DNA from: Klebsormidium nitens
Taxonomy: Eukaryota > Plantae > Klebsormidiophyceae
Length of the DNA stretch: 53,257 bases
Assembly: GCA_000708835.1 (NCBI GenBank)
Contig: DF237416.1
Span: 21,896-75,152, forward strand
Direction: 5' to 3'
Each line of letters begins with the position of its first letter. Positions within the stretch are counted from its first letter, which is position 1. Both the position numbers and the translations under genes were made by a program. Under the pieces are notes generated by a model, which did not search any database, was not told the DNA's origin, and saw nothing but the letters and a program-made list of their open reading frames with translations. Positions 41,762-52,860 of this stretch are shown one piece after another.

Positions 41762-44700
41762 ATGCTCCGCCAGGTGGCCTTGCTGCTGAGGCAGCGTCTG
41801 GAGGCCTCACCTGGACTGCACGGGCCTCGTTTGGGCAGGGGCCGTCTGCTGGAGTGTACTCAGCGCCTGCAAGAATGGGCGCTATCGGATGACAGTACAA
41901 GGCAACAAGCGTTCTGTGAAAACCAAACTGAGGCGCAGTGTTTGGTGGCGCCGCGCAGAAATGAAAAGAGGAGTGAATGGGAGTGCCATCAGGCGGACTG
42001 CTCGGCACTAGCTTGTGATGAACCAGGAGGCATTGATGGTGGTACATCTCAGAACAATCAATGCCAGGTCAGGTTGTCAGGATGGGCTTTGGTGAACCAC
42101 AGGAGATGCTCCGCAGGCGCAGCGCGCGGTGGAAATCAGCAGATTGCTTTGCCATTCAGCGCGCTTCAGTTCAACAGCCACCACGCTTGGCTGCCGGGAT
42201 ATGACTCATTTGCTCTGCATGGTCACAAGTCGTACAGTGGCGCCGGGGGCCCCCTCACAAGTACCGCCCACTCCAAGCTGCAGCAACCCCTCCCAACCCC
42301 CCCCAATGGATCAGTTGGTCCCATAGCTGCCCTTGCTCCTTCCCACCCCGCTTCACAAAACTCTTCCACCACCCCCATCGAGGACCCCCCAGTGTCAGGA
42401 ACAGCTCCCAAACGCCCGCTGCTCAAGTCCGGAGTGCTCGATGGCCCCCCCACCGCAGTCTCTCACTGGCTGCAGCGGATCTGTCCTCCGCGCATCTGGC
42501 CTTACGTGCAGCTTGGGCGGTACGACAAACCGATTGGGACATGGCTTCTCGCATGGCCTTGCTTTTGGTCTATTGCGCTGGCGGCTCCCCCAGGCGCGCT
42601 CCCAGACCCAGTGCTATTGGCGTGGTTTGGAGCAGGGGCGATCGTGATGAGGGGGGCGGGGTGCACGGTCAACGACATGTGGGACCAGGACATCGATTCT
42701 AAGGTGGGGGTTTGGGATGACTTGAGCCGCAATCTCTGAAAGATTGGTTCGAAGCGGGGTAACTTTTATTGTCCTAAGTAGCTCACTGTATAGGCATTGG
42801 GCAAGCTATCCAATTCTTCTGCAGACAAACCCAATCTGCATGAAAGGTCAAACCTGGACGATGTCAACGTAAGGAGTGCCATACTGTTGTGAATCGTCCT
42901 ACCAGCACAGGGAGGATTGGTCAGTAACCTAGGTCCCGTAACCTAGGTACCCAGGTTATGTCTAGGTTACGGGACCTAGGTTGTTAACAACCTTGGCATC
43001 ACCTAGGTTACTGTACTAACTTTTGAGTTATGCATAGTTTACGCGAACCGGGGTGCCTAGGTTGTGAACAACCTGGGCAGCACCCAGGTTACATAGATTC
43101 GCACCTTGGTTACGCACAACCTGGGTAGCTTATCCATAACCTGGGAATGTAACGGTGTATAGACTTTGTTTGGAGTACGTTTGCTGACCAAAGGAGCAAT
43201 AGTAGAATGGTAAGGCGCTTGATTCTGGTAGGCACGCTACAGAACGTTGGTTCGAGCCCAAGCGCTTACAGTGGTGCTCTTTTTTTCTCGTCCCAAAATG
43301 GCTTTGAAAAGCACCAAAACAAACACTTTCCCACTCGGTTTTCTCTTTTCCTTTTTGATTTTGACTTTCTTGCGACTTGGGCATGCTTTGGTCCGCTCTT
43401 GGCTACAAGATTGTGTCACTCTTGAGAAAAATTTCAAGTTCCATAACGGCCAAAGAGCATCACAAAGTTTCCTTTTTCTCTCTTTGCGCACATGAGTTAT
43501 CAAGAAACTAGCTCGAAGTTGTTTGCAACCCGGGTCTGCATGGGTTGTGCAGAACCTACTTAGGTCAAGAGCGCCACTCAACCCAGGTCCGAGGTTACCT
43601 GGGTTGCTACCTGGGTTACACCACAACCTATGCAATAACCTGGGTACAACCTGCCCAGTTTAGCAACCAATCCCCCCTGTGCAGGATACGTCTATTTCTG
43701 GTCACTAGCAGTTTACAAGCTTGACCATAGTCCCGGAAGAGTAGAGCTTGGGCTATGGATGGACATCAAGACCTGTAATCACATCCTGATCTGCCTTTCT
43801 CCGAACAGGTCTTTCGAACCCAGGACCGTCCCATTGCGTCCAAGCGCGTCTCTCCCCGCAAGGCCTTCCTCTTCCTGGCGGCCCAGTCGACCGTCGGCCT
43901 GGGCGTGCTCCTCCAACTGAACGACTTCAGCAAAGTGCTGGGCGCCTCTTCGCTCTTCCTGGTGGCCACCTATCCCCTTATGAAGCGCATCACCTCATGG
44001 GTGAGGCCCAGAATCTTGAGGTCAAATCAAATACCTGGAGGTTGTTGTCAGGTTTGAGTAGCTGTGCAATCACAGCCTTCATCCGGGTACTGTCTGCTTG
44101 GGAGTGTGCTCCTGTATTGCGTGAGAACTCGCTTCCCAACAAGCAGATTCGTTTGCTGCCCATGGTCAGACCAAATCAGGAACGGGTTTTTACTGCCTGA
44201 AAAGCGTCTGAAAACCAGTGTCCGTGTGGGATCTGGTAAAGGACCTCCCAATTCAGTATCGTTCGCAAAACGATCGAGCCCTTCGAGGTAACACCCCAAA
44301 ACCCTGGTCCCTTTTCAGCGCTGACACGTGGCCCCTCCTCCTGCAGCCCCAAGCCTACCTTGGGCTGACATTCAACTGGGGCGCGCTGCTCGGTTGGTCG
44401 GCCGTGAAAGGCAGTCTCTTCCTTCCCGCCGTCGGGCCCCTCTACGCTGCTGGCATCTGCTGGACGCTGGTGTACGACACCATCTACGCTCACCAGGTGG
44501 GTTTCGTACCTTGTATCGAAAAGCCGGTGTCAAAACCCCGGGGGAAAGACGCTGGTCATACTCGCCAGCTTGTTTTTTTCTGTATCCTTCATTCGCACAG
44601 CAGTCAGCCGGAGTCCTTTTGAATCTCACAACAGTGCTCGGTTGTTTGACACTCACGTGACATGTGTTGCAGGATAAAGAGGACGACAAGCTCGTTGGTG

Positions 44701-45566
44701 TCAAGTCCACGGCCCTGCGCTTTGGGACAGCCACGCCGCAGTGGCTCGCTGGATTTGGCGCCGCTACGTTGGCGGGGCTGGCGGCGTCGGGGGCTGCGGT
44801 GGGCTTGGAGTGGCCCTTCTATGCCGGGCTGACCGTTGCCGGGGCGCAGCTGACGTGGCAGATAGCGAACCTGAAGATGGACGACCGAGCGGACTGCAGC
44901 GCGAAGTAAGTCTGCTGCATCTTAGAGTAATTAGTCAGTTTGACAATCTTTGTCGCACCTCGATTTGCGAGCTGGCTATTTCTGTTCATTTCACAGACGG
45001 AGTCCCTTTTGGTGAATCTCGTTTTGTTACTGGGTGGTCCGATTGTAGCCCAGAAAAAGGGTCGGGACGTTCGAGAAAGCGACGGGACTCTCTCAGGTTT
45101 CTGTAAGAGTCTTTGGAGGTTTCAAAGCTTTTCGGTACCATCACGTCACTTTGTACCGCTGGTAAACTGCTCCGGTCGCCAATATGTTCAACTAGATCTG
45201 CATTGGTCCTGGGGGTTTCTTTGCGTTCCTGGGCGGCGTGTCCCTAGTTCCGAACCTCATAGGATGCGGCCAAGAGAATGCACAACGGTACCAAAGTTTC
45301 CGGAGCCCCACCCTCTCCTTCACATGCATGGATGCGACCAAGCTGGTCATCCGCGAAATTCTGTGACGTAGCCCGACGCCCCATACCGCACTGTGTTCTT
45401 GTTGCATGCGGACGTCCGTTTACTGAACGCAGGAGAGCACGAACATCTGGGGTCATGCGAAGCGGGTGGATGATTGGTCCACTCTATTTGCAGGTTTGTG
45501 TCGAACAAGTGGTTCGGGGCCATCGTCTTTGCAAGCATCGTGGCGGGAAAGCTGGGGGCAGGTTGA
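41762..45566 (+). CDS. COQ2: 4-hydroxybenzoate polyprenyltransferase (COQ2/PPT1), mitochondrial
   Basis: [38 protein letters not shown]|[40 protein letters not shown]|[20 protein letters not shown]. Arg/Leu-rich N-terminus from ATG 41762. Confidence 0.96.
42906..43681. mobile_element. 776-bp non-autonomous TIR element (MITE) in a COQ2 intron, 3-bp TSD CAG
   Basis: Left TIR cacagggaggattggt (42906-42921) versus right accaatcccccctgtg (43666-43681), 15/16 match; cag flanks both ends; dense subterminal ACC(T/C)AGGT(T) repeats at both ends. Confidence 0.88.
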
Positions 45567-47079
45567 ATGACGCCACCAGCAAGGCACTAGCGCTCTCACA
45601 TCATCAACAGCAGATCAGCACTCTTCGAGCGAACTTGGGAATAACGCATGTGAGCGGCCCTTTCCCTTCGATAAGCTTGCGTCTGCATGGTGCAAAATCT
45701 GCGAAGAAATCAGCTTTCAGTGCACCTTTAGTCTCGATTGGCATCATTACAAAGCCATTAAGCGCAATGCGGTTTGCTTTTTGTTTTGCATCTCCTGCTT
45801 GTGCGGCCGTTTCGTGCTGTGGATCAGCAGATTTCACAAGGCTTGTTTTGGCAGGACGGATTCTTTTCATCGCAACGACGAGTTCTAGAGCGCCTCTGGC
45901 CGTCCAAGGAAACAAGCCGATGTTCCTGATCTTCAATAGTCAGCGAGGGCACTGATTCTTGTTGCTCTTATGTCTTCGCCTCTTTCAGGTGGCTGGCTCC
46001 TTCGTTATATCGCGAGTACCTGGGATTCGCCGTGACCTGCGAGGCCTGAGAGGTACCGCTCACCCATTCAACCAGTGGCGAGAAGCTTCCAGCCATAGAG
46101 TCAGTCGCTCAAACAATGATGAACAGGACCTGGATCTGAAGCTGTTCTGAGCAGTTTGTCGCACGCGTGAAAGAAAAGCGGGACTCAGACTCAAGATTTC
46201 GAGTTTAGACAGTGTTTTTAACCTGTCATTCCCCGAGGCAGCGTCCGCCCGTGGCACTTGCACTAAGTCGCCAGCATTCTCTGTGTCATGTACGCGTCTG
46301 GTGGTTATAACCACATGACGGCTACGGGCTTATAGGTGCTCGCGATTACCACGGTTACTATTAGGTTACCATCGGATGTAAATCCCATGACAGACCTGCA
46401 GTGCGCGTGGAAGTTGGAAGACCACGCGCGTGCACGGAACAGTCACGGTATAGCTATCACCAGTACGTCAACAATTAACATGCGTTCTGTACGTACACAA
46501 CTACTGACAGGTGCGTATTGAACTGAACTGGGCGGCCGGGCACGTGCCTCTGAGTGCTGCAAGCTACATGTTTTATCAATATTGTATACTAAGCGCAGCC
46601 GGCCTTGCAATAACTCACATATGCAAAGTATTTGTCATCATTCACGTGCATGATCGACGGCGGCGCTATGACAATTAGCTTATGCGCACATGATTTGTAG
46701 GGCCTGATATGCAGCTGCTGGCATGTGCAGCCGGCATGGCCAAGATCTGATTTGTCCAATTATGTATCAAGGCCCCTCACCGGCCAACTTAACCATTGAG
46801 GCATATAGGAGTATCGCATGCTAAGGCATGCACTGAGACCAGTCTTCGTCCTGGCAATGGCGACGTCGCACGCTGGCGGCGAACAAGTCCATGCAGTCAG
46901 TCATGTGACTCGGCCGCTAGGGCCTGATCGTATCTTTCCATTCAATCTTCGCTGAATATACACAGGTCCGTGTCAGAATTTTCCACTTAAGCAATTGCCG
47001 CATGCCCTGCCAAATGTCCGCACAACCTATCATCAGACAATGAACAACGCCTCCGCGGCTCTATTGACTGACAAGGACG

Positions 47080-50000
47080 CTACCTTATAGTCCGTTCTGT
47101 TGAAAAGACTTGCTCCTCCGTCTCCCTTCCTATCCGCTTCCGGCAGAAGTTTACCGAGCACGCTTCCGCGAAACTTCGTACGCATCTTACATCCCCCAAC
47201 CCGTACTCTCGACTGTAGCTGTCAGCCGGAGGGGCGCCGCACAGACTACACACCTCTCCCCCTTCCTTTCGCTCCGTGCACAGAAAGCTCTTCACCTGCC
47301 GTTCCGACGCCGCGCGAGCTTTCAGATCGGGCTTCCGAGATTCCCGGAAGAAGGGCCTGTGCTCCCTGGACCACTGGTGAAACACTAGAGCTTCCGGCGG
47401 CGCGTACACGTCCCAGCCGTGGGTGAACAACCGGACGGCCATGATCATCTCCTCCCCAAAGAAGAGCTCGGGTAGATGCGGGCTATATGGGACCTGCAGT
47501 CGGACAGGGGACTAATGAGCGACGCGACGGGGATCTGCTGGCATTGCACTTTGCAGTGCCGGCTAGGGTGGTGTGACGTGTTCGGGGTGACCCCAAACCG
47601 AGAAGCAAAAGCAAAAGCCAATCGGATGCCGGGCCTCAATGAAAACTGCATGTATTGCCCAATATCTTTCGAAATTGCAAACCTTTGCTAAGTCCGGGTA
47701 CTGGCAAGATTCCGGGGGGAGACCAGGATGAGGATAGCTGCATCATCGATGGCCTTGACTGGCATTGATTGAGAAGAACAACAGGTAGACCTCGAGACAA
47801 GGACGGCTGTCCTGAGACTGAACAAGAACTTGCAAATCGATGGGTCTCTCTTGATTGAGGATCCACAAGCCACGCACAGGCTCGCTCAGGCTGAAGGACC
47901 GTAAGCGGCCCCAAATGCACCAAAACCGTGGCAGGACTTAGAAGCACAGACCTCACAAAAAGCACTGCCTATTTCCTGGAGGAAGCGAGTCCCCTCTTAC
48001 CTCCTGGATTACCGCCGACCTCGAGAAAGAGAAGCCCGCCGCCCAGAAAGCGCTCCGCACCGGCTCTCCGCCCCGGGATTCCGCCCGGCGCCCCGTCATG
48101 CGCAGCAATCCGTCAGGCCCGAACTCTTTCGCGCACAGAAATGTGGGCCGCGAGTCTTCGGGAATTGAAGCGGCCGCCCCGAGACCTTCGTAGGGGGGCG
48201 GGTACGAGCTCAGCACCGCTTTCGGCGACCGCGTCTCGGCTGCTGCCAAGGCGGCTAGCAGCTTGGTGTCCCACTGGGGGGCGAAGCGCATGTGGGAGTC
48301 GATCTGTCGGGAAACGGGGCGTCATGGCTTTCTCAGCTAGCAAGGAGTAACCAGACTGTGCGGCGTGCGTTAGGTGACTCTGGCAAATCTCTGAACCCTT
48401 AATCTGGTCATGCATTGAGCATCCGAGTCGATATCGAAGTGGTTTAGGAACCACCTCAACGACGGCAGTCTGTGTGCTCGTCATAAGAAGTTCTTGCCAG
48501 TGACACTTAGACGGTCAGAAGCCCCGTTCATCCAACTTTCACCTACAGGAGCTTCCCGTTTTTCTCCAATGCAACCCGCGGCTCGACTCCATTCCAGCAT
48601 GAATCTGGAACGGCTTCGTTCTTGTGGACAGATTGAATTTTCTCTCTCAGATGGAGCTCCTTCTCCATACTTACAGACAGAGTCACTCTCCCACACCCCC
48701 TCACCTGCAGGAAGAACTCCTCCCCGTCCCACAGCTGCTGCGCCCGGTGCCGCGCCCAGCACGGCCCCGTCGCCTCGCGCCAGTCCACCCGCACCTCCCG
48801 CACGCGCTTCCGGGCGTCCTCGTCCAGCCCCCTGAGGTGCGCAAACTCGCAGTCGTCCCGCTCGTCGATCTGCCACACGATCCCTACCCAGACGCGACCG
48901 GGCAGGTCCGCTTTTCTGAAAAGGTCCTTGACAGTCCACCGGCACTCCGAATCACGGTAGCACACGAGTGAGACGAAAATGCGCTGGGCAGGGGAAAGAG
49001 AGTGGGAGGGGCCGGTAAGAGGAGGGTGTGGTGCAGAGGGGTGGATGGTGTTGACAGCATGAGTGCTTGTCTTCTGCGAGGTGGTTTCCAACGCGGGGTT
49101 GTCGCCAGCCTCTCGGGAACCTTTTCCCAAACCGTTGAGGCAGTCGCCTCTCTTGCTTGGGACCGTAGGTTCCGTTCTGCCAGTGTTGGAGCAACCCTCC
49201 GCTTGAGCCTCTTGTCCAGAACAACCCCCACCCGATTCTGATGCGTCTTGCTTCGCCCCCTCCGAGAACCACGCTGTGACAGCGAAGCGCTTGGCATGCG
49301 CCGGCAGTACTTCATGCTCCATCCCGCTCTCGAACAGCACCACGTTGCCTCCCATGGGAGGTAGGTCGATGCTGGCCCCGTCTTTCAGGAAGAGGCGCAG
49401 CTGTCCTCCGTCGTTGGGGGTCCATTCAGGGTTGAGGTAATAGAGCACGGTGACGGTGCGGTGGGGGCTGCTGGGAGAGCGGTCTCTGTGGCGGACGTAT
49501 CCGGCGCCCCCTCCCTGCGGCACAAAATCCGTGCTAAGATGCAAAGTACCAGGTCACAGCTCTCCTAGCATCTTCATCTGAACACCTTTGACAGCTTGAA
49601 CAAGACAAGGTTGTCAGAAGTGGTGAGTCGAAGCTGAGCCAGTCAAACCAGGGCTTCTCCAGTATTTAGCTAAACACTTGCAAGGAAGCCGGCCGACACT
49701 GATCTCAGCCTTCTATAAAAAGATACAGTGGCAGGATCAGAAAATGACAACGCTTGACAGCAAATTTCCTCACACCTTCTGATTGCAAGACTTCAATAGA
49801 TCAGAAAGTCAACAGCATATGTGAATTGCTGCAGAGAAGAATCTAGTGGTCTGACCTACCGGGTAGCAGGCAAGCTGGAAGGAAACGGGGCCTGACACAT
49901 CATAGCCTGCTTCTTGCAACGGTTGCTTCAAGCGCAGTAGCATCTGTGTCAGGGCTTGAAAGCTCTCCCAACCAGGCTGCAACACTTGGGCCGGCTTGAG

Positions 50001-50706
50001 CCACATACGCCGGTCCCCCCGAAAGTGTTGGTCGATCCACTGAGTCTCGGCTCCGCCCCCCATTTTAGCAGCCGTCATCTCTCCTTCTAGAGCACAGTCA
50101 GCACAGGAACGGGCAGCCGTCACCTGCGCAGGGGAATATCTGTTCATTACGGTGTGGTTTGCATTTGCAGCTGCACTCAATAGTTCACTGCAAACAGGGC
50201 CCGCTTTGCCGTCGTTTATTGAAGTGGTTCCCACCAGATTCACGCACATCAAGTGAATGCAGGACACTTGTTCAGTTTGCCAGACTGCTTGCAAGCAGCA
50301 TTGCATCCTGCTTTCGCACCACCCCAGGACAAAACGGGAAGAGTCGAGCTCTTACATCAAGCTCCACCAATTCTGCAGCATAGAGGACCAGGGAGTTGAT
50401 GTGGCTCACCAGCTCCTTTGTCACCGCTCCTTGGACTAGTGCGTATCCACTTCTTGCAAGTGTATCCACAGCGTCCATCAGGGGAGAGTCCTCATGACTC
50501 CATTGAAACACACTCTTGCTGGTCCCTGCCTCTTGAACAAATGAAGCCTCAGGACCGGAGTCAACTTCCCCGGCTGGACCCTTTCCCCCATTATTCAAAG
50601 ACGTCGCGGATTTTAGGGGTTGCTCTGACTTCTCAAGCAGCGAGAGGATGCGCAGCTGGCAGACGTCCGGTAGGTCAGAGATGGCGCGCACGGGAGGACC
50701 CATCAT
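47080..50706 (-). CDS. Fusion protein: F-box-like N-terminus + PhyA/EGLN-type prolyl 4-hydroxylase + Gnt1 (GT60) hydroxyproline GlcNAc-transferase, ~695 aa
   Basis: Five phase-0 exons: 50706-50410, 50123-49860, 49514-48705, 48303-48001, 47493-47080. P4H: RGDRRMW, CYP|GGGAGYVRHRD (HxD), MEHEVLP, KRFAVTAWF. GT60: RIFVSLVCYRDSEC, GPCWARH, LQ|IDSHMRF..WD, FWAAGFSFS, PELFFGEEM..RLFTHGWD. Confidence 0.9.
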
Positions 50707-51129
50707 GCAGAGTAGTATTGCCAGTCAGTCCAGCACATACGTACGTTTGGCCAGCTTTTCCAAGTTCCTGAGGTCATTCTCCAGCTAACTCTGCCGTGTT
50801 CAATCGCCTTGCGCGATCGGAAGTACTGCTGCTTGTCTCCATGGAGACTCATCATGGCCAGAAGCTGAAAGCGCTCGGAATCTTCCTCCGGGCAGTAACT
50901 CTGTACCCAGCGCGCAGAAGTTCCTTCCCGGGTACCCAGTTCCCGGGCAATGTCTACAGATGCACCGGCAAATGCATGATGAAGGTCTTTGTACAACCCA
51001 CACTCATGGTCCGTATCGGGAAAACCTCTCAAAACACCAAGGCATCGATATTGATCGAAAGCTTCGTAAGTCAAGTTCCGATATGTCAATACGACAGAAG
51101 GGCATTGGACTTGAGGGGCCCTGCCCACA

Positions 51130-51345
51130 GATATACCTTAGGGGGTCCCGCCGACCTTAGGGTCAAAATATTTGGAATCGAATCTTGACCTTAAACCTAG
51201 ACTTCGCCCGGTCACTTACAAGGGCGCCCCGGGCACACTTAGGGACTGGGTCACTACAACACACTCAAGTACCTAAGTATTTGTGGTTATTGTCGAATCT
51301 TAAGGCCTTGGTGCCATTCCCATCCACACAATGCCTAAGGTCGGG
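51130..51345. repeat. Inverted/direct-repeat-rich segment built on CCTTAGG/CCTAAG
   Basis: ccgaccttagg (51151-51161) and cctaaggtcgg (51334-51344) are exact inverted repeats. Internal gcccgg..ccgggc hairpin and several further CTTAG(G)/CCTAAG copies. Confidence 0.65.
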
Positions 51346-51469: not shown

Positions 51470-51800
51470 CAAGCGGTGCAGATGCGCGCACATGGTTCTC
51501 CTTGCGCTAGGCTCTGGAAAACCGAGGATTTGCCTTGGGTGTTCTCGCGAAGGGACGATGCATGAAGCCCGCTCCACGACAATTGACCGAAGGCCGAGCC
51601 CGGCCGTACAAATGGCAACTTCGGGTCCTTACATGCGCCCATAGCCGACCTCGACCTAGATCGTTCGACGTGTAACAACGCATTTGCACCCAGTGGGCGA
51701 CACCTCGGGATTGTTGGCTCGTCGACACTAATCATGAGCTATTTTTTGGCAACATGCTGATTCATAATTTGTCTCCTGTTTGCACGTACACTCGTTGTCA
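51470..51800 (-). pseudogene. Degenerate pre-SET/AWS plus SET N-terminal exon
   Basis: One frame reads ECTCK..ACCQKIAHD*CRR..GCKCVVTRRTI*VEV..EVAICTAGLGLRSIVVE..HRL|gtgaga; three in-frame stops (TAG, TAG, TAA) in the Cys-rich/SET-N part. Confidence 0.5.
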
Positions 51801-51889
51801 AAAAGGGAATCGACAAAGGATGGGAGGGGGATGCGAGTCTGGAGGCACTGTTCGCGTTAGCACGTCCGTAGAGTCTTGGGTGGTGAAAG

Positions 51890-51995
51890 GAGTAACGTTT
51901 GTCTTCAGTGAAGCCGTGCTGCGTGCCTCCAATCGTCCATAATTCTTCTGGTACTTCTTTGGTAGGAGTTGAATCTTCCTGTATCTGATCGGCCT
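51890..51995 (-). pseudogene. tnpB: N-terminal stub of IS607 TnpB/Fanzor2
   Basis: IRYRKIQLLPKKYQK + frameshift + IMDDWRHAARLH* resembles the TnpB/Fanzor start (RxxKIRLYPxxxQ...W...AR) and overlaps the tnpA 3' end as in IS607. No convincing RuvC motifs follow. Confidence 0.55.
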
Positions 51996-51999
51996 GTCC

Positions 52000-52567
52000 C
52001 CGTTTGAGTAGTTTTTCTTCTGAGCGTTTGGTTCCCATGTAACATCGCCTTCCGTTCCATTTAGAACCAAACACCTGAATGACTGCAAGGACGTCCTCTG
52101 CAAGCTCTACCTCTGGAGACTTATCGTCTTCGTCGAGAACCACGAGGTTGACACCGTGTCTTTGAAAGTGCCATGCGAGCAGATCGAATCCGAATCGGCA
52201 CATGCGGTCCTTCGAGGCAACCACAACCTCGCGTACAGTGCCTCTCTTGCTCTGTTCCAAAAGGGATAAAAGTCCCTTCCTCTTTGAAGTTGAGCCCGGA
52301 GTCGATGTCCGTGACAAGGACGTGTCCAGGGTATTTTTCAAGCAGATACTGGGACTGACATCTAAGATCGTCCTTTTGTTTGCGGCTCGAAACCTTGGTG
52401 CAGACATACAATTGACGCTCTGCACTCTTTGGGCTGTCGAGGTCATAGAGACGTTGCCCTCCAGGGCTCTTGATTACAGAGATCTTTCCAGCTGCCTCTC
52501 ACCGAATAAGGTTTCGAGTACAGACGCCATAGTATGCGGTAGCCTGAGAGAGGCGGACATGTCTCAT
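52000..52567 (-). mobile_element. tnpA: IS607-family serine recombinase/transposase tnpA pseudogene (2 frameshifts)
   Basis: MerR-like HTH YGVCTRNLIRWE/AGKISVIKSPGGQRLYD, then KVSSRKQKDDLRCQ..YPGH..TDIDSGLNF/KRKGLLSLL..VVVASKDRMCRFGFDLL..ELAEDVLAVIQVF. Frameshifts near 52490 and 52290. Confidence 0.9.
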
Positions 52568-52668
52568 CCGGTATAGTGTACCCCTAGGGAATCTTATCGA
52601 GATTTAAACGCACTTGTCGCTGTCTATCCTTCATTTCGTTGAACTCCTCATAGCCTTTTTTGTTGCAG

Positions 52669-52860
52669 GTAAATCGTGCATGCTTCGATCAGGCCAACTT
52701 GCAGATTGTGTACGAGAAAGTTGAACCCTGGCAGGGAGCTCGCTGGCTGACATTCATCGCAAAACGTTACATTGAGCAGGGCGAGTTTCTTGCTTGGGAT
52801 TACAATGTTGCCTTTGACAAGTGCTATTGTATGTCTCATAGGCAAAGGCAGCATTTATAG
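52669..52860 (+). pseudogene. SET-domain C-terminal exon plus degenerate post-SET
   Basis: Acceptor ttttttgttgcag| then VNRACFDQAN..FIAKRYIEQGEFLAWDY..KCYC, matching NHxCxxN..AxRxIxxGEELxxDY..CxC with His replaced by Arg. Confidence 0.7.

What the first reader, a model, noticed from the sequence alone, without database searches (positions are those of the whole stretch)
50632..50682. F-box-like motif at the N-terminus of the Skp1-modifying fusion
Residues 9-25, ISDLPDVCQLRILSLLE, follow the first half of the F-box consensus (LxxLPxExxxxILSxL); the second half is not evident. F-boxes are Skp1-binding modules (established), so this enzyme may carry its own substrate tether or join SCF complexes as an O2-dependent pseudo-F-box protein. 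I know of no such addition in described PhyA/Gnt1 proteins, but I cannot search to confirm novelty.
Basis: inference. Interest (0 to 1): 0.75.

Follow-up and report, generated by a model that had tools for sequence, protein, structure and literature searches.

The report
Conserved docking helix on Skp1-modifying enzyme
The F-box-like stretch at the start of this alga's Skp1-modifying enzyme is a real, expressed and conserved short helix on a floppy tether, but it is not an F-box domain: it is the local form of an end-of-protein motif shared by the same fused enzyme in many other algae and in water moulds, and what it binds is unknown.

Summary
Observation confirmed. Window 50632-50682 (minus strand) encodes residues 9-25, ISDLPDVCQLRILSLLE, of a five-exon, 695-aa prolyl hydroxylase (PhyA)-Gnt1 fusion. 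It is identical to a GenBank protein of Klebsormidium nitens.

- **Expression:** spliced contigs from four studies keep exon 1. They do not use the suspected donor near 50745.
- **Selection:** in seven Klebsormidium-like relatives the first 25 residues are the best-kept part of exon 1 (pN/pS 0.20, against 0.77 for the linker).
- **Structure:** AlphaFold gives one helix (14-27) followed by about 40 disordered residues.
- **F-box test:** the match is sub-threshold (PF00646, E 0.043, 14.2 bits against a 20.5 cut-off). It covers helix 1 only; helices 2 and 3 are absent.

The main new result is that the motif is not a Klebsormidium addition. PhyA-Gnt1 fusions of brown algae, pelagophytes and oomycetes carry a related motif at the N-terminus, and most diatom fusions carry it at the C-terminus. 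The consensus is L-[P/D/E]-x3-Q-x2-I-x-S-F-L-G. The F-box hallmark LP is not conserved, and only the Klebsormidium pieces I could identify hit the F-box model.

Best reading: a tethered, position-independent docking helix. Skp1 is the most plausible partner, but this is untested. I found no description of the motif in the papers I could read.

The parts
50632..50682 (-). The finding: codons 9-25, ISDLPDVCQLRILSLLE
   Evidence: Translation. Pfam F-box E 0.043, profile positions 1-19/43.
50626..50706 (-). Conserved N-terminal element, residues 1-27: M-M-G-P-P-V-R-A-I, then LP, then predicted helix 14-27
   Evidence: 16/25 residues invariant in 8 orthologues. pN/pS 0.20. AlphaFold helix 14-27, pLDDT about 84 for residues 11-20. 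A PSSM built from stramenopile motifs alone picks residues 11-25 as the best 15-mer of the whole protein.
50494..50625 (-). Disordered, fast-evolving linker, residues 28-71
   Evidence: pLDDT 34-46. pN/pS 0.77 and indels between orthologues.
50410..50706 (-). Exon 1 coding part (99 codons); residues 72-99 begin the prolyl 4-hydroxylase domain
   Evidence: Splice joint in contigs of 4 runs. Identity to P0100 residues 1-99. PDB alignment to PPHD starts at residue 72.
50707..51073 (-). 5' UTR (at least to about 50808 in three runs, to 51073 in one), with a 24-codon uORF 50703-50777 whose TGA overlaps the ATGATG start
   Evidence: Contig ends. Sequence. The upstream ORF is not conserved as protein in relatives.
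50124..50409 (-). Intron 1 (GT..AG)
   Evidence: Joint 50119/50406 with cut +4, seen in 4 runs.
49860..50123 (-). Exon 2, hydroxylase domain (RGD..W region), residues 100-187
48705..49514 (-). Exon 3: hydroxylase C-terminal half (HxD...H), second disordered linker (residues 279-354) and start of the Gnt1 domain, residues 188-457
   Evidence: Pfam PF13640 2e-18 and PF11397 1.1e-18..
48001..48303 (-). Exon 4, Gnt1 (GT60) domain, residues 458-558
47080..47493 (-). Exon 5 with stop codon, Gnt1 domain C-terminal part, residues 559-695

Best explanation
Residues about 8-27 of the K. nitens PhyA-Gnt1 enzyme form a short amphipathic helix preceded by Leu-Pro. A disordered linker of about 45 residues holds it on the prolyl hydroxylase domain. 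It is the Klebsormidium version of a terminal motif of the whole PhyA-Gnt1 fusion family: [hydrophobic]-A-x-L-[P/D/E]-x3-Q-x2-I-x-S-[F/W/L]-[L/I/V]-G. The motif sits at the N-terminus in brown algae, pelagophytes, oomycetes and Klebsormidium, and at the C-terminus in most diatoms. It is not an F-box domain; in Klebsormidium it merely matches F-box helix 1 best. That much is shown. The rest is inferred. The helix works as a tethered docking element that binds a hydrophobic groove in trans. The most plausible target is the enzyme's own substrate, Skp1, at the helix 5-7 surface that F-box helix 1 and the Skp1 homodimer also use. That would keep Skp1 monomeric and close to the two active sites, while leaving the disordered C-terminal region with the target proline free. 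My confidence in the anatomy (a family-wide terminal helix, not an F-box) is about 0.85. My confidence in Skp1 as the partner is about 0.35-0.4; the figure given for this explanation as a whole is the latter.
For: The motif is expressed and is not spliced out. It is under protein-level purifying selection, with freely changing synonymous sites and a near-neutral linker. AlphaFold gives a single helix 14-27 with the same pLDDT (about 84) in the exon-1 model and in the full-length model, flanked by pLDDT below 50, so it behaves as an independent tethered element. Homologous motifs occur in other fusions, and 34 N- and C-terminal instances align without gaps. A PSSM from 11 stramenopile N-terminal motifs scores residues 11-25 as the top 15-mer of the 695-aa protein (10.2 bits, next best -1.8). 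Shuffles reach that score 73 times in 20000; for orthologue P0003 the figure is 1 in 20000. A PSSM from 14 N-terminal seeds (11 stramenopile, 3 Klebsormidium) finds C-terminal hits up to 19.4 bits, against a shuffle maximum of 11.8, and all lie in the last 25-35 residues. With a second PSSM whose seeds include six of the C-terminal instances found, 29 of 110 fusions have the motif at the N-terminus, 35 at the C-terminus and 1 at both (Fisher p 2e-5, descriptive only). The terminus follows clades: the diatom clade is mostly C-terminal, and the non-diatom clade that holds K. nitens is N-terminal. For Skp1 as partner: F-box is the only Pfam hit (E 0.043, helix 1 only). Skp1 recognition determinants lie outside the PhyA active site, and the 40 C-terminal residues with the target Pro are disordered (PMC7864055). 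Helices 5-7 form F-box subsite 1, and hydroxylation occurs at the start of helix 8 (PMC13278062). Other pathway enzymes bind Skp1 non-catalytically through that hydrophobic surface (PMC13278062). Minimal LPxx(L/I) F-box-like motifs of polerovirus P0 interact with SKP1 (PMC8475269).
Against: The F-box score is below threshold. PF00646 matched only 2 of 30 N-terminal pieces, and none of the 20 stramenopile pieces scanned individually matched any F-box model. LP, the residue pair critical in true F-boxes, is not conserved across the family. The family profile retrieves only designed coiled coils from the PDB, and no F-box proteins. An isolated F-box helix 1 is not known to me to bind Skp1 stably. 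The stramenopile seeds were picked by eye, which adds some circularity to the PSSM statistics, and the PSSM is partly self-scoring for the C-terminal class. I could not see the N-termini of stand-alone PhyA proteins (Dictyostelium, Toxoplasma).
Confidence: 0.4

Rival explanations
1. The helix acts within the enzyme. It docks on the enzyme's own hydroxylase or Gnt1 domain (autoregulation, or coupling of the two reactions), or it pairs with the same helix of a second molecule to dimerise the enzyme.
For: The heptad-like amphipathic pattern makes designed coiled coils (CoilSer) the best PDB matches of the family profile. The motif works from either terminus on long linkers, as an intramolecular latch or oligomerisation tag could. 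Other enzymes of the pathway act as dimers (GAT1, PMC13278062).
Against: The pLDDT of the helix does not rise in the full-length model compared with the isolated exon-1 model (84 in both), as might be expected for a confidently docked latch. No contact map was available. A single helix of about 14 residues is short for a stable coiled coil.
Confidence: 0.25
2. The motif docks on a partner other than Skp1. One candidate is a PCNA-type groove: the core Q-x-x-I-x-S-F-L resembles the PIP box Qxx[ILM]xx[FY][FY], which also sits at protein termini. Another is Elongin C: L-x3-C-x3-I fits the BC box.
For: This rests on my recollection of the PIP-box and BC-box consensus sequences, compared with alignment A7. 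Q, I, S and F/W are the best-kept positions. The extreme terminal location is typical of PIP boxes. K. nitens has L12, C16 and I20 in BC-box spacing.
Against: K. nitens has L-L, not an aromatic pair, at PIP positions 7-8, and the stramenopile forms have an aliphatic residue at position 8. The Cys of the BC-box reading is confined to Klebsormidium. The PDB profile search returned no PCNA-peptide or Elongin C-complex chains. No biological link between this enzyme and PCNA or Elongin C is known to me.
Confidence: 0.13
3. It is a true but degenerate F-box. It recruits the enzyme into SCF complexes as a (pseudo-)substrate receptor, as in the JmjD6-like dioxygenase F-box protein JcdI/FBXO13.
For: F-box is the only Pfam hit (E 0.043 and 0.12). 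The motif lies at the N-terminus, where F-boxes sit. F-boxes are very degenerate in protists and may carry insertions between helices. There is a precedent for an O2-dependent dioxygenase with an F-box (PMC9485057).
Against: There are no helices 2 or 3: the next 40 or so residues are disordered, unconserved and variable in length. The score is below the cut-off. The family-level motif lacks LP and also works from the C-terminus. No precomputed F-box is recorded in any listed fusion.
Confidence: 0.07
4. It is a sorting or stability signal (nuclear export signal, membrane-binding amphipathic helix, or degron) unrelated to substrate binding.
For: It is a Leu/Ile-rich amphipathic helix at a protein terminus. 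Skp1 is nucleocytoplasmic while the pathway is cytoplasmic, which I state from general knowledge.
Against: The pattern does not fit the class 1a export-signal spacing when read by eye. The conserved Q, S and G positions are not explained by a purely hydrophobic signal.
Confidence: 0.08
5. It is a chance resemblance in a functionless N-terminal extension.
Against: There is strong purifying selection on exactly this segment, and the motif recurs in distant lineages.
Confidence: 0.02

Closest known systems
F-box domain (Pfam PF00646 / PF12937), helix 1
   Same: An LP pair followed by an amphipathic helix with I-L-S-x-L, near the N-terminus, in a protein whose partner is Skp1. It is the only Pfam hit of the 40-aa N-terminal piece.
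   Different: Only profile positions 1-19 of 43 match, and the score of 14.2 bits is below the 20.5 cut-off. There are no helices 2 or 3, and no conserved Trp region. The family counterparts lack LP and may be C-terminal.
Minimal F-box-like motif of polerovirus P0, LPxx(L/I)x10-13P (PMC8475269)
   Same: A short LP-based motif, not a full three-helix F-box, that is reported to interact with SKP1.
   Different: It is viral, sits inside a folded protein, and has a required downstream Pro. Here the motif is a terminal helix on a disordered tether, and binding to Skp1 is untested.
PhyA/Gnt1 dual-function enzyme of Pythium ultimum and other stramenopile fusions (cited in PMC9485057 and PMC7864055; sequences)
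   Same: The same P4H + GT60 architecture with a disordered inter-domain linker. Oomycete fusions begin with a related motif (L-S-P-Q-L-Q-A-L-V-E-A-S-L-G).
   Different: The Klebsormidium form has LP and Cys and scores weakly as an F-box, whereas the oomycete form does not. I could not read the primary Pythium paper, so I do not know whether its authors noted the motif.
JcdI/FBXO13, a JmjD6-like dioxygenase with an F-box (PMC9485057, PMC11570480)
   Same: An O2-dependent 2-oxoglutarate dioxygenase that carries an N-terminal Skp1-binding module.
   Different: JcdI has an F-box validated by Skp1 binding and is an SCF subunit. Here only a helix-1-like motif is present, and Skp1 is the substrate.
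Non-catalytic Skp1 binding by the late glycosyltransferases GAT1 and AgtA (PMC13278062)
   Same: Enzymes of the same pathway hold Skp1 through its hydrophobic F-box/dimer surface, apart from catalysis.
   Different: Those contacts come from folded domains, not from a tethered terminal helix.
PIP box (Qxx[ILM]xx[FY][FY]) and BC box ([STPA]Lxxx[CSA]xxx[ILV]); both consensus sequences recalled from memory
   Same: Terminal location and Q-x-x-I-x-S-F spacing (PIP). L-x3-C-x3-I spacing in K. nitens (BC box).
   Different: The aromatic pair is missing in K. nitens and incomplete elsewhere. The Cys is not conserved in the family. No PDB or Pfam support was found.

Membership tests
F-box domain (PF00646/PF12937) | Profile HMM score at or above the Pfam gathering threshold | tested here: not met
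   PF00646 scores 14.2 bits against a 20.5 cut-off, E 0.043 (window). P0003 scores 12.8 bits, E 0.12. The whole exon-1 ORF gives no hit. PF00646 matched 2 of 30 family N-terminal pieces, and none of the 20 stramenopile pieces scanned individually matched any F-box model.
F-box domain (PF00646/PF12937) | LP pair followed by helix 1 with the hydrophobic pattern LPxE-phi-phi-xx-I-phi-xx-L | tested here: met
   L12-P13 are followed by I20, L21, S22 and L24. The match covers profile positions 1-19, and a helix is predicted at 14-27. It is met only in the Klebsormidium clade and some stramenopiles; C-terminal forms have LD or LE.
F-box domain (PF00646/PF12937) | Three-helix bundle: helices 2 and 3 following helix 1 within about 45 residues | tested here: not met
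   AlphaFold shows no helix between residues 28 and 70, with pLDDT 34-46. The region is unconserved and variable in length.
F-box domain (PF00646/PF12937) | Direct binding to Skp1 | not testable with these tools
   No multimer prediction or experiment was available.
PhyA-Gnt1 (Skp1 prolyl 4-hydroxylase / GT60 GlcNAc-transferase) fusion | PHD-type 2OG-Fe(II) oxygenase domain with the HxD...H triad and the 2OG-binding Arg | tested here: met
   PF13640 at 2e-18. PDB hits to PPHD (3e-29) and PHD2 (1.5e-20). H196, D198, H254 and R263 are invariant in 95 fusions.
PhyA-Gnt1 (Skp1 prolyl 4-hydroxylase / GT60 GlcNAc-transferase) fusion | GT60 'GlcNAc' domain (PF11397) C-terminal to the hydroxylase in one polypeptide | tested here: met
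   PF11397 at 1.1e-18 on exon 3. P0100 carries PF13640 + PF11397, the same as 100+ listed fusions. Spliced contigs join all five exons.
PhyA-Gnt1 (Skp1 prolyl 4-hydroxylase / GT60 GlcNAc-transferase) fusion | Hydroxylation and GlcNAcylation of the Skp1 target proline | not testable with these tools
   This needs an enzyme assay. The K. nitens Skp1 gene is not in the window.
Terminal motif of PhyA-Gnt1 fusions (defined in this report) | Match to L-[P/D/E]-x3-Q-x2-I-x-S-[FWL]-[LIV]-G within about 80 residues of the N-terminus or 40 of the C-terminus, next to a disordered linker | tested here: met
   The stramenopile-only PSSM picks residues 11-25 (10.2 bits, shuffle 73/20000). The alignment with 33 other instances is gap-free. 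The linker is disordered.
PIP box | Q-x-x-[ILM]-x-x-[FY]-[FY] | tested here: not met
   K. nitens has Q17-L-R-I20-L-S-L23-L24, with no aromatic pair. Stramenopile forms have F/W/Y then L/I/V. The consensus is recalled from memory.
BC box (Elongin C binding) | [STPA]-L-x3-[CSA]-x3-[ILV] helix | tested here: inconclusive
   D11-L12-x3-C16-x3-I20 fits except at the first position. Cys is invariant in Klebsormidium but is L/A/T elsewhere. The i, i+4, i+8 spacing is generic for amphipathic helices. There is no SOCS or VHL Pfam hit.

The most novel reading that the evidence does not exclude
The terminal motif is a minimal, single-helix Skp1 binder, a mimic of F-box helix 1. PhyA-Gnt1 fusion enzymes across stramenopiles and Klebsormidium use it, from either end of the polypeptide, to seize monomeric Skp1 at subsite 1 while the disordered C-terminal tail is hydroxylated and glycosylated. 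That would be an enzyme docking onto its substrate through the very groove whose occupancy by F-box proteins the modification regulates. The enzyme would then compete directly with F-box proteins and with Skp1 dimerisation.
Probability: 0.3. Interest if true: 0.7.

Novelty: new variant of a known kind. Interest (0 to 1): 0.5.

Why it matters
Prolyl hydroxylation and glycosylation of Skp1 form the oxygen-sensing route of many protists, and how PhyA and Gnt1 recognise folded Skp1 is unresolved. Determinants outside the active site are inferred in PMC7864055. A short, conserved helix on a tether, present at one end or the other of the fused enzyme in brown algae, diatoms, oomycete plant pathogens and a streptophyte alga, is a concrete and cheaply testable candidate for that recognition element. 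If it binds the F-box groove, the enzyme would compete with F-box proteins and with Skp1 dimerisation, adding a non-catalytic layer of control like the one proposed for GAT1 and AgtA. If it binds something else, it points to an unknown partner of the pathway. For annotation, the lesson is narrower: this is not an F-box protein and should not be labelled as one.

Tried and rejected
- **Pfam on the whole exon-1 ORF and on full orthologue fragments:** no hit. Only the 40-aa piece gave the weak F-box hit.
- **phmmer/hmmsearch against the PDB:** searches with exon 1, with the exon-1 alignment and with the 30-residue motif alignment gave nothing or noise. The family motif profile returned only designed coiled coils, nsp7, AFF4 and primase, all at E of 0.085 or more.
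- **ESM Atlas by features:** no usable hit.
- **Metagenome scan with the exon-1 alignment:** 145 pattern matches, none confirmed. The second scan, with exon 3, gave 13 loci, of which L009/L017 led to the full-length fusions.
- **Search for stand-alone PhyA with residues 60-280:** it returned mainly bacterial PPHD-like proteins and Klebsormidium fragments. The N-termini of Dictyostelium and Toxoplasma PhyA could not be examined.
- **An intron hiding the second half of an F-box:** a GT at 'AA|gtcaga' after LLEK would shift the frame into a stop. The contigs show no such joint.
- **A coding 5' extension:** the 141-aa upstream ORF is not conserved as protein in relatives.
- **HMMER local scoring of a stramenopile-only HMM:** it aligned only QxRILS of K. 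nitens (0.2 bits, shuffle p 0.06). The ungapped PSSM was more informative.
- **The primary paper on the Pythium fusion (PMC6774341):** not held.
- **Joined spliced model:** Searches were exon by exon. Full-length work used P0100, a database protein returned, and I checked it exon by exon against the window.
Full report
**The gene.** The finding lies at the 5' end of a minus-strand gene. The ORF 50272-50706 starts MMGPPVRAISDLPDVCQLRILSLLEK, so residues 9-25 are encoded by 50632-50682 as stated. Downstream ORFs carry a PHD-type 2OG-Fe(II) oxygenase domain (PF13640, 2e-18) and the GT60 'GlcNAc' domain (PF11397, 1.1e-18).

Contigs of four runs from four studies, laid on 46900-51300, show four GT-AG joints. 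These define five exons on the minus strand:

| Exon | Window coordinates | Length |
|---|---|---|
| 1 | 50706-50410 | 99 aa |
| 2 | 50123-49860 | 88 aa |
| 3 | 49514-48705 | 270 aa |
| 4 | 48303-48001 | 101 aa |
| 5 | 47493-47080 | 137 aa plus stop |

My first guess for the exon-1 donor (near 50355) was wrong; the contigs place it at 50409. The same contigs run unspliced from 50406 to 50792-50808, and to 51073 in one run. The 'aac|gtacgt' site near 50745 is therefore in the 5' UTR and is not used. An in-frame TGA lies seven codons upstream of the ATG.

A later search returned P0100, 'N-acetylglucosaminyltransferase family protein [Klebsormidium nitens]', 695 aa. The five exon peptides occur in it consecutively and exactly. 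This fixes both the organism and the gene model.

**Conservation within Klebsormidium-like algae.** Reading every protein of the 1.84-billion representative library with exon 1 gave four relatives. The word search with their alignment gave three more. All are exon-1 read-through fragments from assemblies and metagenomes, and three of their contigs carry the same hydroxylase and GlcNAc exons downstream.

The eight peptides are 42-79% identical overall. Sixteen of the first 25 residues are invariant, no residue of linker 26-75 is invariant, and six of 24 are invariant at the start of the hydroxylase domain.

Nei-Gojobori counts on the codon alignment give pooled pN/pS values of:
- 0.20 for residues 1-26;
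- 0.77 for the linker;
- 0.58 for residues 76-99.

Synonymous differences reach 0.5-0.7 in the distant pairs. The constraint is therefore on the peptide, not on the RNA.

**F-box tests.**
- The exon-1 ORF gives no Pfam hit at all.
- The first 40 residues alone hit PF00646 at E 0.043, with 14.2 bits against a cut-off of 20.5, over profile positions 1-19 of 43. The orthologue P0003 gives E 0.12 over positions 2-24.
- PDB sequence searches with the peptide, its alignment and the motif alignment find no F-box protein.
- AlphaFold2 on the eight-sequence alignment predicts a turn at 9-11, the LP pair, one helix at 14-27 (pLDDT about 84 for residues 11-20) and disorder from 33 to 70.
- In a full-length model built on 95 fusions (mean pLDDT 79.7) the helix has the same confidence. 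Residues 28-67 score 34-46, and a second disordered linker spans 279-354.

So there is a helix-1-like element and nothing that could be helices 2 and 3.

**The motif belongs to the whole fusion family.** A cDNA-like metagenome contig (L009) gave a natural full-length query. It found 487 PhyA-Gnt1 fusions, 120 of them listed. They come from brown algae, Chrysoparadoxa, pelagophytes, diatoms, oomycetes (Pythium, Phytophthora, Saprolegnia and others), Guillardia and K. nitens. None has a precomputed Pfam F-box.

Their termini show the same kind of element:
- **Brown algae:** the proteins begin M-A-L-P-A-K-L-Q-A-S-I-L-S-W-I-G.
- **Chrysoparadoxa:** A-L-P-A-A-L-Q-S-K-I-F-S-F-I-G.
- **Oomycetes:** L-S-P-Q-L-Q-A-L-V-E-A-S-L-G.

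A PSSM built only from 11 stramenopile N-terminal motifs scores residues 11-25 as the best 15-mer of the whole K. nitens protein, at 10.2 bits with the next best at -1.8. Shuffles of the N-terminal extension reach that score 73 times in 20000. For P0003 the count is 1 and for P0009 it is 7.

The N-terminal seeds (11 stramenopile, 3 Klebsormidium) then found hits of 12-19 bits in non-seed fusions, against a shuffle maximum of 11.8 bits per whole protein. Nearly all of these lie in the last 25-35 residues of diatom fusions. An example is L-L-D-V-K-T-Q-A-K-I-L-S-F-L-D, four residues from the end of P0090.

Thirty-four N- and C-terminal instances align without a gap. The consensus is x-x-A-x-L-[P/D/E]-x3-Q-x2-I-x-S-F-L-G.

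With a second PSSM, whose 17 seeds include six of the C-terminal instances found, and at a 99th-percentile shuffle threshold, the 110 fusions of at least 550 aa divide as follows:

| Motif position | Fusions |
|---|---|
| N-terminal only | 29 |
| C-terminal only | 35 |
| Both termini | 1 |
| None at this threshold | 45 |

Several of the 45 show weaker C-terminal variants. The two positions are nearly exclusive (Fisher p 2e-5). This figure is descriptive only, because relatives share states.

A quick maximum-likelihood tree splits a diatom clade (34 C, 6 N, 19 none) from a non-diatom clade (24 N, 1 C, 24 none) with full support. K. nitens lies in the non-diatom clade on a long branch, and its pairing with Guillardia is flagged as possible long-branch attraction.

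**Is the family motif F-box-like?** Of 30 N-terminal pieces from the family, PF00646 matched two. The two known F-box matches are the window's own piece and its Klebsormidium-like relative P0003. One further member, which I did not identify, matched F-box-like (PF12937) at E 0.13. Ten further N-terminal and ten C-terminal stramenopile pieces, scanned individually, hit no F-box model.

The family profile retrieves designed coiled coils from the PDB, not F-box proteins. LP is replaced by LD or LE in the C-terminal forms.

The F-box resemblance is thus best seen as the Klebsormidium flavour of a more general amphipathic helix. The shared hydrophobic register (positions 1, 5, 9, 10, 13, with Ser at 11) is the same as in F-box helix 1. 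It is also the register of any i/i+4 amphipathic helix. I also noted, from memory, that the core resembles a PIP box and the K. nitens form a BC box. Neither fits fully (see the membership table).

**Mechanism.**

Shown:
- a conserved helix at a protein terminus;
- a fast-evolving disordered tether;
- independence from which end of the enzyme carries it;
- no gain of model confidence in the context of the full protein.

These are the properties of a docking module that binds a groove in trans or in cis.

Inferred: the substrate is the most economical partner. The literature supports this indirectly:
- Skp1 recognition determinants lie outside the PhyA active site, and the target proline sits in a disordered 40-residue tail (PMC7864055).
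- Skp1 helices 5-7 form F-box subsite 1, and the modified proline is at the start of helix 8 (PMC13278062).
- The late glycosyltransferases hold Skp1 non-catalytically through that hydrophobic surface (PMC13278062).
- Minimal LP-type F-box-like motifs of polerovirus P0 are reported to interact with SKP1 (PMC8475269).
- A dioxygenase with a real F-box exists (JcdI, PMC9485057).

A single helix on subsite 1 would leave the tail free for both active sites and would compete with Skp1 dimerisation and with F-box proteins. I put this at about 0.35-0.4. An intramolecular or dimerising role is at 0.25, another partner at about 0.13, a sorting or stability signal at about 0.08, a true degenerate F-box at 0.07, and chance at about 0.02.

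**Novelty.** The gene and the fusion architecture are known and annotated. The presence of pathway genes in green algae, diatoms and Phytophthora has been noted before (PMC3515798). In the papers I could search and read I found no mention of a terminal motif or an F-box-like sequence in PhyA or Gnt1. The primary paper on the Pythium fusion is not held, so prior description cannot be excluded.

I rate this an undescribed accessory motif of a known enzyme family. It is moderately interesting and directly testable.

Noticed in passing
window 50703-50777 (-): A 24-codon uORF in the 5' UTR has its TGA overlapping the main start (ATGATG), an arrangement compatible with termination-reinitiation control. 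The longer 141-aa upstream ORF (50703-51128) is not conserved as protein in relatives.
   Followed up: partly
window 51739-52446 (-): An ORF with a Resolvase N-terminal domain (PF00239, E 1.3e-10) covers only profile positions 44-138 of 145. It is a truncated serine-recombinase remnant just upstream of the gene.
   Followed up: partly
window 52660-52860 (+): A short ORF resembles the C-terminal end of a SET domain (PF00856, E 0.0065, below the cut-off). It may be an exon of a neighbouring gene or a fragment.
   Followed up: no
window 44218-44909 (+); L006 13752-13994; L008 12024-12372: UbiA prenyltransferase exons lie downstream of the PhyA-Gnt1 gene, and the same neighbour occurs in the related contigs, so local synteny is conserved among Klebsormidium-like algae.
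   Followed up: partly
P0100 residues 279-354 (window 49014-49241, -): A second long disordered linker (pLDDT 30-37) separates the hydroxylase and Gnt1 domains. It is rich in Ser/Pro/Gly/Thr.
   Followed up: no
Diatom fusions, e.g. P0057, P0072, P0082, P0090, N-terminal 10-40 residues: Many diatom PhyA-Gnt1 fusions that carry the motif at the C-terminus begin with a different conserved element, [LI]-[RK]-[SG]-W-[TS]-P-x-T-T-x-x-L, of unknown role.
   Followed up: no
P0017 (8-22 and 745-759); P0030 (264-278 of 905): One fusion carries the terminal motif at both ends. Another has it internally, after a long extra N-terminal region but still upstream of the hydroxylase domain.
   Followed up: no
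P0106 (681 aa) and P0048 (957 aa): A Methylophilaceae (bacterial MAG) 'GlcNAc-transferase family protein' matches the Gnt1 half at E 2e-61. One eukaryote-like hit has the domain order reversed and an added PF00535 glycosyltransferase domain.
   Followed up: no
tree: The K. nitens fusion sits on a long branch inside the non-diatom, mostly stramenopile clade, next to Guillardia. The join is flagged as possible long-branch attraction, so the origin of the gene in a streptophyte alga (vertical or transferred) is open.
   Followed up: partly
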